Assembly (NCBI GenBank): GCA_038087875.1 | Contig: CM075979.1 | Coordinates: 86,614,001-86,678,000 of the forward strand | Reading direction: 5' to 3' | Source of the DNA: Malacoraja senta | Taxonomy: Eukaryota | Length of the DNA: 64,000 bases | In this document: positions 7,082 through 63,745 of the stretch, in pieces | How positions within the stretch are numbered: the first letter of the stretch is position 1 | How the letters are laid out: each line of letters starts with the position of its first letter | The notes under the pieces: generated by a model | What the model saw: only the letters and a program-made list of their open reading frames with translations | Database searches by the model: none | Told to the model about the DNA's origin: nothing | Translations under genes and position numbers: made by a program

Positions 7082-8690
7082 CAGTGGCTTGCAAAGGTTT
7101 TCATACCCCTTGAACTTTTCCACATTTTGTCACGTTACAACCACAAACGTAAATGTATTTTATTGGGATTTTATGTGATAGACCAACACAAAGTGGTGCA
7201 TAATTGTGAAGTGGAAGGAAAATGATACATGGTTTTCAAATTTTTTTTACAAATAAAAAACTGAAAAGTGTCGCGTGCAAAAGTATTCAGCCCCGCTGAG
7301 TCAATACTTTGTAGAACCACCTTTCGCTTCAATTACAGCTGCAAGTCTTTTGGGGTATGTCTCTACCAGCTTTGCACATCTAGAGACTGACATTTTTGCC
7401 CATTCTTCTTTGCAAAATAGCTCAAGCTCAGTCAAATTGGATGGAGAGCATCTGTGAACAGCAATTGTCAAGTCTTGCCAGAGATTCTCAATTGGATTTA
7501 GGTCTGGACTTTGACTGGGCCATTTTAACACATGAATATGCTTTGATCTAAACCATTCCATTGTAGCTCTGGCTGTATGTTTAGGGTCGTTGTCCTGCTG
7601 GAAGGTGAACCTCCGCCCCAGTCTCAAGTCTTTTGCAGACTCTAACAGGTTTTCTTCCAAGATTGCCCTGTATTTGGCTCCATCCATCTTCCTATCAACT
7701 CTGACCAGCTTCCCTGTCCCTGCTGAAGAAAAGCATCCCCACAGCATGATGCTGCCACCACCATGTTTCACAGTGGGGATGGTGTGTTCAGGGTGATGTG
7801 CAGTGTTAGGTTTCCGCCACACATAGCGTTTTGCATTTAGGCCCAAAACTTCAATTTTGGTCTCATCTGACCAGAGCACCTTCCTCCACATGTTTGCTGT
7901 GTCCCCCACATGGCTTGTGGCAAACTGCAAACGGGACTTCTTATGGCTTTTTTTCAACAATGGCTTTCTTCTTGCCACTCTTCCATAAAGGCCCGATTTG
8001 TGGAGTGCACGACTAATAGTTGTCCTGTGGACAGATTCTCCCACTTCAGCTGTGGATCTCTACAGCTCCTCCAGAGTTCCCATGGGCCTCTTGGCTGCTT
8101 CTCTGATCAATGCTCTCCTTGCCTGGCCTGTCAGTTTAGGTGGACGGCCATGTCTTGGTAGGTTTGCAGTTGTGCCATACTCTTTCCATTTTTGGATGAT
8201 GGATTGAACAGTGCTCCGTGAGATATTCAAAGCTTGGGATATTTGTTTATAACCTAACCCTGCTTTAAACTTCTCCACAACTTTATCCCCGACCTGTCTG
8301 GTGTGTTCCTTGATGCTGTTTGTTCACTAATGTTCTCTAACAAACCTCTGAGGCCTTCACGGAACAGCTGTATTTATACTGAGATTAGATTACACACAAG
8401 TGGACTCTATTTACTAATTAGGTGACTTCTGAAGGCAATTGGTTGCACTGGATTGTATTTAGGGGTATCAGAGTAAAGGGGGCTGAATACTTTTGCACGC
8501 GACACTTTTCAGTTTTTTATTTGTAAAAAAATTTGAAAACCATGTATCATTTTCCTTCCACTTCACAATTATGCGCCACTTTGTGTTGGTCTATCACATA
8601 AAATCCCAATAAAATACATTTATGTTCGTGGTTGTAACGTGACAAAATGTGGAAAAGTTCAAGGGGTATGAATACTTTTGCAAGCCACTG
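7082..8690 (-). mobile_element. Tc1/mariner DNA transposon, Passport-like (copy 1)
   Basis: ~213-bp TIRs beginning CAGTGGCTTGCAAA with inner/outer direct repeats (gcaaaagtattca); TA duplication at 7080-7081 and 8691-8692; 1609 bp. Confidence 0.97.
7301..8311 (-). pseudogene. DD34E Tc1 transposase pseudogene
   Basis: WSDETK / QQDNDPKH / [11 protein letters not shown] motifs and GRPPKL linker. A 9-nt deletion removes ATG-AAG-CCC relative to the other copies; CAG>TAG at 8060-8062. Confidence 0.95.
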
Positions 8691-39265: not shown

Positions 39266-39551
39266 GTTGTTGATGAGAGGCAACTGAAGAAAAAATAAGA
39301 GCTTACAGTGCCTTCCATAATGTTTGGAACAAAGACCCATCATTTATTTATTTGCCTCTGTACTCCACAATTTGAGATTTGTAATAGAAAAAATCACATA
39401 TGTTTAAAATGCAAATTGTCAGATTTTAATAAAGGCCATTTTTATACATTTTGGTTTCACCATGTAGAAATGACAGCAGTGTTTATATATGGTCCCCCCA
39501 TTTCAGGGCACCATAATGTTTGGGACACAGCAATGTCATGAAAATGAAAAT

Positions 39552-41154
39552 AGCTTTGAAAAACTTATTTGTTGGTTTAGCAGTATGTTTGGGATCATTG
39601 TCTTGCTGCAGATTGAACCACTGGAGTTTTGAGGTATTTGTTTGAACTTGAGCAGATAGGATGTGTCTATACACTTCAGAATTCATTATGCTACTTCCAT
39701 CACCAGTTGTATCATCAATGAAGATAAGTGAGCCAGTACCTTCAGCAGCCATACATGCCCAGGCCAAAACACCACCACCATCGTGTTTCACATTGCAGGT
39801 GGTAGGCTTTGGATCTTGGGCAGTACCTTCTCTCCTCCATACTTTGCTATTACCATCACTCTGATATAAATTAATCTTCGTCTCATCTGTCCACAAGACC
39901 TTTTTCCATAACTGTGGTTGCTCTTTTAAGTACTTCTTGCCAAACTGTAACCTGGCCATCCTATTTTTGCAGCTAACCAGTGGTTTGCATCTTGCATTGT
40001 AGCCTCTGTATTTCAGTTCATGAAGTCTTCTGCAGACAGTGGTCATTGACAAATCCACACCTGACTCCTGAATGTTTCAGATCTGTCAGACAGGTGTTTG
40101 GGGATTTCTCTTTATTATAGAGAGAATTCTTCTGTCATCAGCTGTGGAGGTCTTCCTTGGCCTGACAGTCCCTTTGCGATTAGTAAGTTCACCAGAGCTC
40201 TCTTTCTTCTTAATGATGTTCCAAACAGTTGATTTCGGTCAGCCAAGTTCAAATTCAAGTTCAAATTTATTTGTCACATGCAACATAAGGTGCAGTGGAA
40301 TGTAATTTACCATTCAGCGTTACAATTAAAAAAGGACACAATACATAACATAATTCAACATAGACATCCACTACAGCATCCTTCACTGTGGTGGAAGGCA
40401 ATATAGTTCAGACAGTCCTCCTCCTCCTCCCTTGTTCACCCGTGGTCGGGGCCCTGACCCTCTGTAGTCGCCGACCCGATGTTCAAGTCCTCTGGTTGGG
40501 ATGGTCAATGTCGGGACAGGTCGAGCACACACCACGGCCCGGAGCTCCCAATCGGCCACCTCCGTACCGGAGACAACGGCTTCCAGATGTCGTAGGCCGG
40601 CGACCCCCGGCGAGGGATCGCCTGCTCCACGATGGTAAAGTAAAGTCCACTCCACGCCTGCCACCAAAAGCTCCACAGACCGAGGCTCAAAGATGTTGTA
40701 GGCCACAGGCCAGCGGTCGGAGCGCTTCTCTGGCGACCCCCGGTAAGGGGGTCCGCGATGTTAAAAGTCCCCACTGCGCCACCGTTGAAGCTCTGGTCCG
40801 ACTCCGGGAAAGGCCGCACCAATCCAGCTATAAGGCCGCGAGGAGGGGGGCGAAGAAGCGACAAGGAAGAAAGTCGCATCTCCATCGAGGTAGGTGCCTG
40901 AAAACGGTTTCCCCCTATTCCCTCCCACCAGCCCTCACAGAAGACATACAGAGAAACACTAAAACATACTTTTGGACAAACTAAAAAAAACAAAAAAAGT
41001 CAAAACAACGAACCCGCTGCAGGAGAGGCAGCCGACTTGCAGCGCCACCGGAACTTGTGTTTAAGGTCTGGCTGGTGTCTCTAACAGTTTTATTCTTGTT
41101 TCTCAGTCTCATAATGGCAGCTTTGACTTTTAATGGCACAACTTTGGTCCTCAT
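39552..41154 (-). pseudogene. Tc1 transposase pseudogene (family 2)
   Basis: MRTKVVPLKVK..SQTL at 41154-41062 resumes at 40244 (..PKSTVWNII..LWTDETKINLY..QQDNDPKH); C-terminus including the catalytic E is deleted; internal stops. Confidence 0.9.
40245..41061 (-). mobile_element. ~817-bp GC-rich non-coding retroelement inserted in the Tc1 ORF
   Basis: Minus strand begins ..agttccggtggcgctg and ends gtgacaaataaa(tttgaacttgaa)n; Tc1 reading frame rejoins across it; no TSD. Confidence 0.8.
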
Positions 41155-58995: not shown

Positions 58996-60752
58996 TTAAA
59001 GAAATGGCAAAAAAATATGAGATTTAATACGGGATAGGATATAAAAATAAATAGGAGGCTTGGCCAAAATATGCTTCTTTGCCAGACATCACTGATCGAA
59101 CCTTCAGATTGAAAGCAAATGAAAGTTGAAACCCTAGAGACATTAAAAAAGGAAGTTGGAGGAATTAGGAACCATGTAAAACCACATACCCTGAATAAGA
59201 CTAGATTCTGTTTACAATTTCATAATTTTTATTGGTTTATCATTTTTAAATTAAGTGAAAAAATAGAATATGTGCTTCTACCTGTCAATTTAATCTGCAA
59301 TCTTGCTTGAAGTAATGTTCTGTGAAATGAAGATTAAATGAAGGATGTCAGAAGCAGTGCCCTAGATGTAAACGACAAGTTGTGTGGAGAGAGATCCCAC
59401 TTTTACATTACCACCGGCAGATGTCTCATGGCATCACTGAAGTCACTCAGATGATCCTCATTTTTTCGAAATGCAAGAATATTTTAGCATGTAAGGCACA
59501 AAGTTGAATTGTTTCCTTTTAGGCTGCTCAATCTAATTGCTATGTAAACAACCCCTCAGGCCACAGCACTTAATTAGTGTTAAATTGGAGGGAGATTGTG
59601 AGTTTGAGCTTGAGCTCAGCAGTACACAGCATTTTAAGGCTGCATTTGCATCGCAGTGGCTCTGCTCAAACTAGTAGTTGTGATGCAGTTTACTGTCAGT
59701 CCCGCTTCCGTTACTTAGCTGCTGCTGGACTGCAATGGCCGAGTCTGAGAGAAAATTATGTACATGCATGAATGCACACATACACAATGTTTTTTGTGAA
59801 TATTAGCAATGTTGATAGTGAGAAGACTGAGGTATATCCTGATGTATGCTATGCTCTCTGAACAGTTAGTTATGTACAGTGGCTTGCAAAAGTATTCATA
59901 CCCCTTGAACTTTTCCACATCTTGTCACGTTACAACCACAAACGTAAATGTATTTTATTGGGATTTTATGTGATAGACCAACACAAAATGGCGCATAATT
60001 GTGAAGTGGAAGGAAAATGATACATGGTTTTCAAATTTTTTTACAAATAAAAAACTGAAAAGTGTGGCGTGCAAAAGTATTCAGCCCCCTTTACTCTGAT
60101 ACCCCTAAATAAAATCCAGTGCAACCAATTGCCTTCAGAAGTCACCTAATTAGTAAATAGAGTCCACTTGTGTGTAATCTAATCTCAATATAAATACAGC
60201 TGTTCTGTGAAGGCCTCAGAGGTTTGTTAGAGAACATTAGTGAACAAACGGCATCATGAAGCCCAAGGAACACACCAGACAGGTGAGGGATAAAGTTGTG
60301 GAGAAGTTTAAAGCAGGGTTAGGTTATAAAAAAATATCCCAAGCTTTGAACATCTCATGGAGCACTGTTCATTCCATCATCCGAAAATGGAAAGAGTATG
60401 GCACAACTGCAAACCTACCAAGACATGGCCGTCCACCTAAACTGACAGGCCGGGCAAGGAGAGCATTGATCAGAGAAGCAGCCAAGAGGCCCATGGTAAC
60501 TCTGGAGGAGCTGCAGAGATCCACAGCTCAGGTGGGAGACTCTGTCCACAGGACAACTATTAGTCGTGCACTCCACAAATCGGGCCTTTATGGAAGAGTG
60601 GCAAGAAGAAAGCCATTGTTGAAAAAAAGCCATAAGAAGTCCCATTTGCAGTTTGCCACAAGCCATGTGGGGGACACAGCAAACATGTGGAGGAAGGTGC
60701 TCTGGTCAGATGAGACCAAAATTGAAGTTTTGGGCCTAAATGCAAAACGCTA

Positions 60753-62369
60753 CAGTGGCTTGCAAAAGTATTCATACCCCTTGAACTTTTCCACATTTTG
60801 TCATGTTACAACCACAAACGTACATGTATTTTATTGGGATTTTATGTGATAGACCAACACAAAGTGGCGCATAATTGTGAAGTGGAAGGAAAATGATACA
60901 TGGTTTTCAAATTTTTTTACAAATAAAAAACTGAAAAGTGTCGCGTGCAAAAGTATTCAGCCCTCCTGAGTCAATACTTCGTAGAACCACCTTTCGCTGC
61001 AATTACAGCTGCATGTCTTTTGGGGTATGTCTCTACCAGCTTTGCACATCTAGAGACTGACATTTTTGCCCATTCTTCTTTGCAATATAGCTCAAGCTCA
61101 GTCAGATTGGATGGAGAGCGTCTGTGAACAGCAATTTTCAAGTCTTGCCAGAGATTCTCAATTGGATTTAGGTCTTGACTTTGACTGGGCCATTCTAACA
61201 CATTAATATGCTTTGATCTAAACCATTCCATTGTAGCTCTGGCTGTATGTTTAGGGTCGTTGTCCTGCTGGAAGGTGAACCTCCGCCCCAGTCTCAAGTC
61301 TTTTGCAGACTCTAACAGGTTTTCTTCCAAGATTGCCCTGTATTTGGCTCCATCCATCTTCCCATCAACTCTGACCAGCTTCCTTGTCCCTGCTGAAGAA
61401 AAGCATCCCCACAGCATGATGCTGCCACCACCATGTTTCGCACTGGGGATGGTGTGTTCAGGGTGATGTGCAGTGTTAGGTTTCCGCCACACATAGCGTT
61501 TTGCATTTAGACCAAAAACTTCAATTTTGGTCTCATCTGACCAGAGCACCTTCCTCCACATGTTTGCTGTGTCCCCCACATGGCTTGTGGCAAACTGCAA
61601 ACGGGACTTCTTATGGCTTTTTTTCAACAATGGCTTTCTTCTTGCCACTCTTCCATAAAGGCCCGATTTGTGGAGTGCACGACTAATAGTTGTCCTGTGG
61701 ACAGATTCTCCCACCTGAGCTGTGGATCTCTGCAGCTCCTCCAGAGTTACCATGGGCCTCTTGGCTGCTTCTCTGATCAATGCTCTCCTTGCCCGGCCTG
61801 TCAGTTTAGGTGGACGGCCATGTCTTGGTAGGTTTGCAGTTGTGCCATACTCTTTTCATTTTCGGATGATGGATTGAACAGTGCTCCGTGAGATGTTCAA
61901 AGCTTGGGATATCTTTTTATAACCTAACCCTGCTTTAAACTTCTCCACAACTTTATCCCTGACCTGTCTGGTGTGCTCCTTGGGCTTCATGATGCTGTTT
62001 GTTCACTAATGTTCTCTAACAAACCTCTGAGGCCTTCACAGAACAGCTGTATTTATACTGAGATTAGATTACACACAAGTGGACTCTATTTACTAATTAG
62101 GTGACTTCTGAAGGCAATTGGTTGCACTGGATTCTATTTAGGCGTATCAGAGTAAAGGGGGCTGAATACTTTTGCACGCAACACTTTTCAGTTTTTTATT
62201 TGTAAAAAAATTTGAAAACCATGTATCATTTTCCTTCCACTTCACAATTATGCGCCACTTTGTGTTGGTCTATCACATAAAATCCCAATAAAATACATTT
62301 ACGTTTGTGGTTGTAACGTGACAAAATGTGGAAAAGTTCAAGGGGTATGAATACTTTTGCAAGCCACTG
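60753..62369 (-). mobile_element. Passport-like Tc1 element (inner copy)
   Basis: Full TIRs; TA duplicated at 60751-60752 and 62370-62371; 1617 bp. Confidence 0.97.
60971..61990 (-). pseudogene. DD34E transposase of inner copy, single nonsense (W45*)
   Basis: ATG at 61990-61988; 340 codons; TGG>TGA at 61858-61856; otherwise open. Confidence 0.95.
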
Positions 62370-63409
62370 TATGTGTGGCGGAAACCTAACACTACACATC
62401 ACCCTGAACACACCATCCCCACTGTGAAACATGGTGGTGGCAGCATCATGCTGTGGGGATGCTTTTCTTTAGCAGGGACAGGGTAGCTGGTCAGAGTTGA
62501 TGGGAAGATGGATGGAGCCAAATACAGGGCAATCTTGGAAGAAAACCTGTTAGAGTCTGCAAAAGACTTGAGACTGGGGCGGAGGTTCACCTTCCAGCAG
62601 GACAACAACCCTAAACATACAGCCAGAGCTACAATGGAATGGTTCAGATCAAAGCATATTCATGTGTTAGAATGGCCCAGTCAAAGTCCAGACCTAAATC
62701 CAATTGAGAATCTCTGGCAAGACTTGGAAATTGCTGTTCACAGACGCTCTCCATCCAATCAGACTGAGCTTGAGCTATTTTGCAAAGAAGAATGGGCAAA
62801 AATTTCAGTCTCTAGATGTGCAAAGCTGGTAGAGACATACCCCAAATGACTTGCAGCTGTAATTGCAGCGAAAGGTGGTTCTACAAAGTATTGACTCAGG
62901 GGGGCTGAATACTTTTGCACGCCACACTTTTCAGTTTTTTATTTGTAAAAAAATTTGAAAAACATGTATCATTTTCCTTCCACTTCACAATTATGCACCA
63001 CTTTGTGTTGGTCTATCACATAAAATCCCAATAAAATACATTTACGTTTGTGGTTGTAACGTGACTAAATGTGGAAAAGTTCAAGGGGTATGAAAACTTT
63101 TGCAAGCCACTGTATGTGCGCAGAGAAGACCTTCCACAATTGGCACTATATCATTTGCAAGTTTTTGACACTGGTATTTATTCGCCATGTGTTATCAAAA
63201 AATAAGTCTTTTAAGGCACCTTCTTCAATCATGGATTCAAGAATTACACTGTTGATATAGCTTTGAAGTGGATGTTTCAAAGATTAATTCTTCATTTCAG
63301 TTTGGGGAATTTTAAGAATAGAAAATTGTTTTTGTTCCGTTGGCTTTCTTTGCTGTGCTAGTAGAAAAGATGTTCGGTAATGATGCAAAGCAGGGCTCCG
63401 CTTCATTAT

Positions 63410-63500
63410 AGAAACAAAGTGCTGAAAATACTCAGCAGGTCAGGCTGCATCTGTGGAAAGAAGAACAGCATTAATGTTTCACAGCAAAACCCATCATCAA
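63410..63500 (-). mobile_element. Old PLE-derived fragment
   Basis: aaagtgctgaaaatactcagcaggtcaggctgcatctgtggaaag. Confidence 0.55.
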
Positions 63501-63745
63501 TTCTCTTGTGAGCTAACGTCATCCCAAACGGTTTGTCAGATGTTTTTTTTATTGCAGTTAGCAACCTAAAATGCAAATTTATAAAACGGCAGATAACAGA
63601 AATCTGAAACCAGATGTTTCTGCTTTTGTTATTCTGTTATTCTATTAATCACAAGAGCCCAGAGGAAAATTAGAGTGGCAATTTAGTCACTAAAGTGATT
63701 GGAAATCCCCATTCAGGAGAAGCTCAAAATATCTTCTTGGGATCA

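What the first reader, a model, noticed from the sequence alone, without database searches (positions are those of the whole stretch)
59875..63114. Tc1 element inserted into a same-family element in opposite orientation, creating interleaved long inverted repeats
Seen: the inner copy sits at the TA of the Tyr codon in NAKRY|VWR with a perfect TA duplication. The result is A-B'-A'-B: 59877-60752 pairs with 61494-62369 (876 bp) and 60753-61495 with 62370-63112 (743 bp). Four TIRs allow four excision units, including hybrids with two 5' or two 3' ends. Inference: no target immunity; any read-through transcript forms long dsRNA covering the whole element, so this may be a family-silencing (siRNA/piRNA) locus analogous to Mu killer, and an inversion-prone site.
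Basis: partly seen in the sequence, partly recalled or inferred. Interest (0 to 1): 0.7.

Follow-up and report, generated by a model that had tools for sequence, protein, structure and literature searches.

The report
Dead Tc1 transposon nested in another
One 1.6-kb "jumping gene" of the Tc1 (Sleeping Beauty/Passport-like) type landed backwards inside an older copy of the same family; both copies are now broken relics, so this is an ordinary nested insertion, and no available data test whether it silences the family.

Summary
An outer Tc1-like element (59877-60752 + 62372-63112) is interrupted at a TA by a complete 1617-bp element of the same family in reverse orientation (60753-62369). The TA is duplicated on both sides. 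Removing the insert and one TA restores a 1617-bp outer element. This gives interleaved inverted repeats of 878 bp (98%) and 745 bp (97%).

The family is an IR/DR, DD34E, Passport/Sleeping Beauty-like Tc1. It is present in roughly thousands of copies, and a third copy lies at 7082-8690.

The three copies are equally distant from each other (K2P 0.026-0.027), so they date from one burst of activity. All three are coding-dead. No gene-conversion tract is detectable.

- The two long helices cross, so one transcript can form only one of them at a time. The minimum-energy fold pairs A with A' only, about 54% of the element.
- No host RNA or small-RNA data were available.
- Every family copy already carries a ~220-bp terminal hairpin.
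- Tc1/mariner elements are not known to have target immunity (my background knowledge).

Other first-reader notes on this genome describe similar inverted Tc1 pairs elsewhere. Short-read contigs confirm only the outer junctions. The finding is ordinary and of low interest.

The parts
59875..59876 (.). TA target-site duplication, left side of the outer element
   Evidence: Sequence reads GTTATG-TA-CAGTGG. An X1 contig bridges 59300-59899.
59877..60752 (+). Outer element, 5' part (segment A). It holds the left IR/DR terminal repeat (about 59877-60098), the 5' UTR and codons 1-165 of the transposase (60256-60750), ending in the TA of a Tyr codon.
   Evidence: 98.06% identical to the insert over 876 bp. 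Pfam HTH_SB and HTH_Tnp_Tc3_2 match.
60751..60752 (.). Left copy of the TA into which the inner element inserted
   Evidence: Junction AAACGC-TA-CAGTGG.
60753..62369 (-). Inner element, complete at 1617 bp, on the minus strand (segments B' 60753-61493 and A' 61494-62369). IR/DR ends carry direct repeats at element positions 3, 188, 1411 and 1596.
   Evidence: Both ends read CAGTGGCTTGCAAAAGTATTCATACCCC.
60971..61990 (-). Inner transposase reading frame (339 codons plus stop). It has the DD34E triad and is broken by one in-frame stop, TGA at 61856-61858 (codon 45, where the outer copy has Trp).
   Evidence: Translation. Pfam HTH_Tnp_Tc3_2 and DDE_3 match. PDB 5cr4 SB100X catalytic domain matches at E 7.9e-85. 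D-34-E spacing confirmed.
62370..62371 (.). Right copy of the duplicated TA
   Evidence: Junction CCACTG-TA-TGTGTGG.
62372..63112 (+). Outer element, 3' part (segment B). It holds the rest of the transposase frame, with in-frame stops TAG at 62484-62486 and TGA at 62847-62849, and the right IR/DR terminal repeat (about 62891-63112).
   Evidence: 96.6% identical to the insert over 743 bp. Stops seen in translation. Pfam DDE_3 matches. An X1 contig from another family copy reads C at 62847 (table 3).
63113..63114 (.). TA target-site duplication, right side of the outer element
   Evidence: Sequence reads CCACTG-TA-TGTGCGC. An X1 contig bridges 63092-63445.
7082..8690 (-). Third full-length copy of the same family (1609 bp), used as the comparison copy. 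It is TA-flanked, and a 9-bp deletion has removed its start codon.
   Evidence: blastn gives 96.8% identity over 1618 columns. Three-way alignment. Flanks checked.

Best explanation
This is an ordinary nested insertion. While a Passport/Sleeping Beauty-like Tc1 family (IR/DR ends, DD34E transposase) was actively amplifying, one copy inserted by normal cut-and-paste into a TA inside the transposase gene of a copy already sitting in single-copy DNA. It entered in the opposite orientation and duplicated the TA. Both copies have since decayed neutrally and independently, each about 1.3% from their common ancestor, and neither can make transposase. The interleaved inverted repeats are a geometric consequence of a reverse-oriented self-insertion, not a selected structure. 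If the locus is transcribed through, the RNA would form one long hairpin: the 876-bp 5' half is thermodynamically preferred, or alternatively the 743-bp 3' half, but never both in one molecule. That hairpin could feed small-RNA pathways. This would add only marginally to what thousands of dispersed copies, each with its own ~220-bp terminal hairpin, can already supply.

Shown: the anatomy, the family, the equal divergence, the broken genes and the mutually exclusive folds. Inferred: the order of events, neutrality and the lack of a special role.
For: - Exact anatomy: TA duplications at both levels, a 1617-bp insert, and a 1617-bp outer element once the insert and one TA are removed, aligning without gaps.
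- Family identity: Pfam HTH_SB, HTH_Tnp_Tc3_2 and DDE_3; SB100X catalytic domain at E 7.9e-85; DD34E spacing and four direct repeats. The ends and the first and last codons closely match the Passport primers printed in PMC2651795.
- Same age: pairwise K2P distances are 0.0265, 0.0273 and 0.0260 among outer, inner and the third copy. Private changes number 21, 19 and 20.
- Decay: the outer gene is split and has 2 stops, the inner has 1 stop, and the third copy lost its ATG.
- No homogenisation: the longest identical tract between the arms is 149 bp against 161 bp expected at random (P = 0.56). The 5' versus 3' half difference gives P = 0.08.
- Abundance: summed word depth over the element is 1e5-5e5 against 27-31 on the flanks in X1. 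Three copies lie in this 64-kb window. Skates are reported to carry about 3.3% TcMar (PMC12361510). Self-hits are therefore expected.
- Precedent: nested insertions of a family into itself in opposite orientation are described for Drosophila elements (PMC5932611).
Against: No read or contig shown bridges the inner junctions, so the nesting rests on the assembly plus its internal consistency. No expression or small-RNA data for the host could be examined, so a functional role is not excluded. The copy-number figure is rough, because the tool warns that summed contig depth is not a copy number. I took the identification of the genome as a skate from earlier notes and did not test it.
Confidence: 0.88

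Rival explanations
1. The composite is a working trans-silencing locus. Read-through transcription makes a long hairpin RNA that is diced into siRNAs or fed into the piRNA pathway, and this silences the whole Tc1 family, as Mu killer does for MuDR in maize.
For: Long, nearly perfect inverted arms exist. The predicted hairpin is extremely stable: -2058 kcal/mol with an 860-bp A:A' stem, against -697 for a single element. There is precedent in Mu killer (PMC3440606), in Tc1 read-through hairpins in C. elegans as reviewed in PMC3878927, and in Ac/Ds inverted duplications (10.1101/2020.01.07.897926).
Against: There is no evidence of transcription. No host gene or promoter was found near the locus or in the ORFs tested, and no host RNA run was on offer. 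The two helices cross, so a single transcript covers only about half of the element. Every one of the many copies already has a ~220-bp TIR hairpin, and copies lie in both orientations, so this locus is not a unique source of dsRNA. Its arms have drifted like neutral DNA.
Confidence: 0.05
2. The inner copy is the outer copy's own offspring. After replication, the element excised from the sister chromatid (or made a very local hop) and reinserted into the copy left at the same locus. On this view the nest reflects the local-hopping habit of Tc1/Sleeping Beauty elements rather than a random hit.
For: Sleeping Beauty-type elements reinsert preferentially near the donor (my background knowledge, not tested here). 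The two copies are indistinguishable in age.
Against: If the inner copy descended from the resident outer copy after that copy had sat there for any length of time, inner and outer would be closer to each other than to the unlinked third copy. The three pairwise distances are equal, and the third copy has no excess of private changes: 20 against 21 and 19. With only three copies and no outgroup, a hop immediately after the first insertion cannot be excluded.
Confidence: 0.08
3. The nesting is an assembly artefact, produced by a false join of reads from different copies of a very abundant repeat.
For: The family is highly repeated. The short-read contigs laid break up inside it, and none listed bridges 60752/60753 or 62369/62370.
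Against: A false join in a repeat would produce a chimeric or collapsed element. It would not produce a complete 1617-bp element with intact CAGTG ends and a 2-bp TA duplication that, once removed, restores an in-frame gapless 1617-bp host element. The two copies carry different private variants along their whole length. The outer junctions into single-copy DNA are confirmed.
Confidence: 0.03

Closest known systems
Passport / Sleeping Beauty group of Tc1 elements (IR/DR subgroup, DD34E)
   Same: TA target duplication and CAGTG termini. Terminal repeats of about 220 bp each carry two transposase-binding direct repeats. The transposase has about 339 aa with a paired-like HTH and a DD34E triad. 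It matches the SB100X catalytic domain at E 7.9e-85. The ends and the first and last codons are close to the Passport primers (TACAGTGCCTTGCATAAGTATTC in the paper, TACAGTGGCTTGCAAAAGTATTC here; PMC2651795).
   Different: The copies here are dead relics. The family name and its exact place within the Passport/Barb/SSTN/RTTN/Eagle/Glan set were not resolved.
Nested insertions of a transposon into a copy of its own family
   Same: Both insertion junctions are identifiable, the orientation is opposite, and the target-site duplication is present. McGurk & Barbash report such opposite-orientation nested insertions among Drosophila elements (PMC5932611).
   Different: Nothing essential differs. This is a vertebrate Tc1 example in which both partners are full length.
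Mu killer of maize
   Same: A long inverted duplication of transposon sequence that would fold into a hairpin if transcribed through (PMC3440606).
   Different: Mu killer is a partial inverted duplication of MuDR. It is transcribed from a flanking gene, yields siRNAs and heritably silences MuDR, all shown by genetics. Here the structure comes from a plain insertion, no transcription or small RNA is shown, and the two repeat pairs are interleaved and mutually exclusive in one RNA.
Read-through hairpin RNA of C. elegans Tc1 (Sijen & Plasterk, as reviewed in PMC3878927)
   Same: Same superfamily. In that work, flank-initiated read-through transcripts fold back through the terminal repeats and trigger RNAi. 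Every copy of the present family could do the same with its ~220-bp terminal repeats.
   Different: The nest lengthens the possible stem from about 220 bp to 876 or 743 bp and brings coding sequence into it. Whether this matters in the host is unknown.
Sleeping Beauty 'sandwich' transposon (Zayed et al. 2004, described in PMC4229213)
   Same: Two complete IR/DR elements in inverted orientation on one DNA give eight transposase-binding sites and several possible end pairings.
   Different: In the engineered sandwich the two elements flank a cargo and the inner ends are mutated to block cleavage. Here one element lies inside the other and all four ends look cleavable.

Membership tests
Tc1/mariner, IR/DR (Sleeping Beauty/Passport-like) DD34E elements | Insertion at TA with TA duplication | tested here: met
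   TA lies on both sides of the outer element, the inner element and the third copy.
Tc1/mariner, IR/DR (Sleeping Beauty/Passport-like) DD34E elements | Long (~200-250 bp) terminal inverted repeats, each with an outer and an inner direct repeat | tested here: met
   Terminal repeats are 222 bp and 96-97% complementary (I3 and I4). Direct-repeat motifs lie at element positions 3, 188, 1411 and 1596.
Tc1/mariner, IR/DR (Sleeping Beauty/Passport-like) DD34E elements | Transposase with an N-terminal paired-like HTH and a DDE domain with 34 residues between the second D and the E | tested here: met
   Pfam HTH_SB, HTH_Tnp_Tc3_2 and DDE_3 match. 5cr4 matches at E 7.9e-85. D-90-D-34-E spacing confirmed.
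Tc1/mariner, IR/DR (Sleeping Beauty/Passport-like) DD34E elements | Autonomy (an intact transposase gene) | tested here: not met
   All three copies in the window are broken. They are relics of the family, not active members.
Mu killer-type hairpin silencing locus | Long inverted duplication of transposon sequence | tested here: met
   Arms of 878 bp and 745 bp, although only one pair can form per RNA molecule.
Mu killer-type hairpin silencing locus | Transcription through the repeat from a flanking promoter | not testable with these tools
   No RNA run of the host was offered. The RNA run laid (X16) has zero depth on the flanks. No gene was found in the ORFs tested.
Mu killer-type hairpin silencing locus | Small RNAs derived from the hairpin and trans-silencing of active elements | not testable with these tools
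   No small-RNA data and no genetics were available.
piRNA cluster | Large TE-dense region giving uniquely mapping piRNAs | not testable with these tools
   No small-RNA data were available. The flanks of the nest are single-copy DNA (depth 27-31 in X1), which does not look like a dense TE graveyard.

The most novel reading that the evidence does not exclude
The nest is transcribed through in the germline, and its 876-bp (or, on the other strand, first the 743-bp) hairpin is a major source of small RNAs against this Tc1 family. That would make it a vertebrate counterpart of Mu killer, created in a single step by a reverse self-insertion, and it would have helped end the family's burst of amplification.
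Probability: 0.04. Interest if true: 0.55.

Novelty: already known. Interest (0 to 1): 0.12.

Why it matters
It matters little as it stands. It is a clean, base-exact textbook case of a Tc1 element nested in its own kind. It could serve as a dated marker: the nest formed within one burst, about 1.3% divergence per copy ago. It is also a reminder that interleaved inverted repeats cannot all pair within one RNA molecule. It would matter only if host small-RNA data showed that this locus, rather than the thousands of dispersed copies, seeds silencing of the family. Self-nesting would then be a simple, general route by which a DNA transposon burst generates its own silencer in a vertebrate.

Tried and rejected
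- Gene conversion between the inverted arms. The differences are scattered as randomly as expected: the longest identical tract is 149 bp against 161 bp expected (P = 0.56), and the difference between halves gives P = 0.08. Rejected.
- The inner copy as a recent daughter of the outer copy. The three pairwise distances are equal. Not supported.
- Read support for the inner junctions. Logan contigs inside the element are only 60-90 bp, and only the longest pieces are listed.
- Gene context. Ten of the longest ORFs elsewhere in the window gave no Pfam family except a second Tc1-like remnant. Rfam found nothing in the window. Whether the nest lies in an intron is therefore unknown.
- Literature search for the terminal-repeat sequence found nothing.
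- I did not run the large protein searches, because the family scans and the PDB match already settle what the protein is.
Full report
**What is there.** The window at 59875-63114 reads TA, then 876 bp, then TA, then 1617 bp, then TA, then 741 bp, then TA.

- The repeat finder reports two long inverted pairs: 59875-60752 with 61494-62371 (878 nt, 98% complementary) and 60751-61495 with 62370-63114 (745 nt, 97%). It also reports four mutually related terminal blocks of 222 bp.
- blastn of the middle block against the window shows it is a complete element. The two outer blocks are the 5' (1-876) and 3' (875-1617) parts of another copy in the opposite orientation. A third complete copy lies at 7082-8690 on the minus strand.
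- The junctions read AAACGC-TA-CAGTGG and CCACTG-TA-TGTGTGG. Removing the insert and one TA gives a 1617-bp outer element that aligns to the 1617-bp insert without a gap. It also restores the codons K-R-Y-V-W-R inside LNAKRYVWRKPN.

**What family it is.**
- The reading frame has Pfam HTH_SB, HTH_Tnp_Tc3_2 and DDE_3 domains.
- It matches the solved catalytic domain of Sleeping Beauty SB100X at E 7.9e-85.
- It has D-90-D-34-E spacing. The element carries direct-repeat motifs at positions 3, 188, 1411 and 1596, which is the IR/DR architecture.
- Its termini (TACAGTGGCTTGCAAAAGTATTC) and its first and last codons closely resemble the Passport primers printed in Clark et al. 2009 (PMC2651795). It therefore belongs to the Passport-like group of Tc1 elements.

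**State and age of the copies.**
- The outer gene is split by the insert. It also has in-frame stops at 62484-62486 and 62847-62849.
- The inner gene has one in-frame stop at 61856-61858.
- The third copy lost its start codon through a 9-bp deletion.
- In the three-way alignment the private changes number 21 (outer), 19 (inner) and 20 plus two indels (third copy), with two sites where all three differ.
- Pairwise K2P distances are 0.0265, 0.0273 and 0.0260.
- This is a star: all three copies date from one burst. The insert is logically younger than its host, but the difference is not measurable.
- The inner and outer copies are no closer to each other than to the unlinked copy. There is thus no sign that the insert is the resident copy's own late offspring.
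- There is also no sign that the arms have been homogenised. The longest identical tract is 149 bp against 161 bp expected at random (P = 0.56). The divergences of the two halves (1.9% and 3.4%) do not differ significantly (P = 0.08).

**Abundance and assembly.**
- Of four public runs laid on 59300-63700, only X1 holds the unique flanks, at word depth 27-31. Its contigs bridge 59300-59899 and 63092-63445. The outer element therefore sits in single-copy DNA and its two outer junctions are real.
- Over the element the summed depth is 1e5-5e5 in X1 and similar in runs under other organism labels. Even allowing for the tool's warning that this is not a copy number, the family is present in roughly thousands of copies.
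- The contigs inside the element are 60-90 bp, and none listed bridges the inner junctions. Independent read support for the nest is lacking.
- I nevertheless rate mis-assembly as unlikely. A false join in a repeat would not produce a complete element with intact ends and a 2-bp duplication whose removal restores an in-frame host element.

**Is it more than expected?**
- Three copies lie in this 64-kb window.
- Earlier notes identify the genome as a skate, which I did not test. Skate genomes are reported to carry about 3.3% Tc1/mariner (PMC12361510).
- On those figures, a cut-and-paste element that inserts at TA with little other specificity will sometimes hit its own kind. A rough guess is tens of such events genome-wide (inference).
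- Opposite-orientation nested insertions with both junctions identifiable are described for Drosophila elements (PMC5932611).
- Other first-reader notes on this genome describe inverted pairs of Tc1 copies elsewhere.

- *Excision units.* The four ends can pair in four ways, and all four terminal 40-mers are intact apart from one base. Any movement would need transposase from another copy.
- *dsRNA coverage.* The claim of long dsRNA covering the whole element needs correction. The order is A-B'-A'-B, so A:A' and B':B are crossing helices with no linkers. One molecule cannot form both.
  - The ViennaRNA minimum-energy fold of the whole composite pairs A with A' over 860 bp (plus strand) or 865 bp (minus strand). 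It contains no B':B pair.
  - The A:A' conformer is about 214 kcal/mol more stable than the B':B conformer: -2057.5 against -1843.5.
  - By order of synthesis, a plus-strand transcript would complete A:A' first and a minus-strand transcript B:B' first (inference).
  - One transcript thus makes dsRNA from about half of the element.
- *Uniqueness.* A single element already folds at about -697 kcal/mol through its ~220-bp terminal repeats. This is the kind of read-through hairpin that triggers RNAi against Tc1 in C. elegans (reviewed in PMC3878927). The nest is not a unique dsRNA source for the family.
- *Transcription.* Whether the locus is transcribed at all could not be tested. No host RNA run was on offer. 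The RNA run laid has no depth on the flanks. No host gene was recognised among the long ORFs of the window, and Rfam found nothing.
- *Target immunity.* This mechanism is not known for Tc1/mariner (my background knowledge). Its absence is no finding.
- *Inversion.* The composite has kept its order while the arms diverged by about 2.6%. That speaks against marked instability, although inversion alleles in the population were not examined.

**Comparison with known systems.** The element is a decayed member of the Passport/Sleeping Beauty IR/DR group, and all structural criteria are met. The arrangement is a plain nested insertion. It resembles Mu killer (PMC3440606) only in having a long inverted duplication. 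The defining properties of Mu killer are flank-driven transcription, siRNAs and trans-silencing, and all three are untested here. It resembles the engineered Sleeping Beauty sandwich (PMC4229213) in having two inverted complete elements with eight binding sites, but one element lies inside the other rather than the two flanking a cargo.

**Verdict.** It is not supported for the silencing role, and it is corrected for the RNA topology. This is a known kind of structure and of low interest. The most novel reading not excluded, a self-made hairpin silencer of the family, has a probability of about 4%.

Noticed in passing
window 59877-63112 (family level); runs X3-X20: Pieces of this Tc1 family that are 97-99% alike occur in public runs under at least nine coded organism labels. 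These include RNA-seq runs labelled 'amphibian metagenome', which hold 22% of the sampled 31-mers. Only X1 holds the unique flanks. Earlier notes call this genome a skate. Near-identical Passport-like elements in distant hosts would fit the patchy, horizontally transferred distribution known for this group (PMC2651795).
   Followed up: partly
window 7082-8690 (-): A third full-length, TA-flanked copy of the same family, 96.8% identical. A 9-bp deletion has removed its start codon.
   Followed up: yes
window 39483-40058 (-): An ORF with a Tc3-type transposase HTH domain (Pfam E 1.3e-09). blastn with the nested family does not hit it, so it is a remnant of a second, different Tc1-like family.
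   Followed up: partly
window 62847: An X1 contig from another family copy reads C where the window has T. The outer copy's second stop codon (TGA) therefore corresponds to CGA in that copy, consistent with a CpG transition after insertion.
   Followed up: partly
window 63416-63562: Summed contig depth is about 844, against about 31 for neighbouring single-copy DNA in X1. This is a small repeated segment in the right flank, and a 22-nt imperfect hairpin lies at 63593-63640.
   Followed up: no
window 59828: The X1 contig that bridges the left flank lacks 2 bases relative to the window. This is a small indel difference between the run and the assembly.
   Followed up: no
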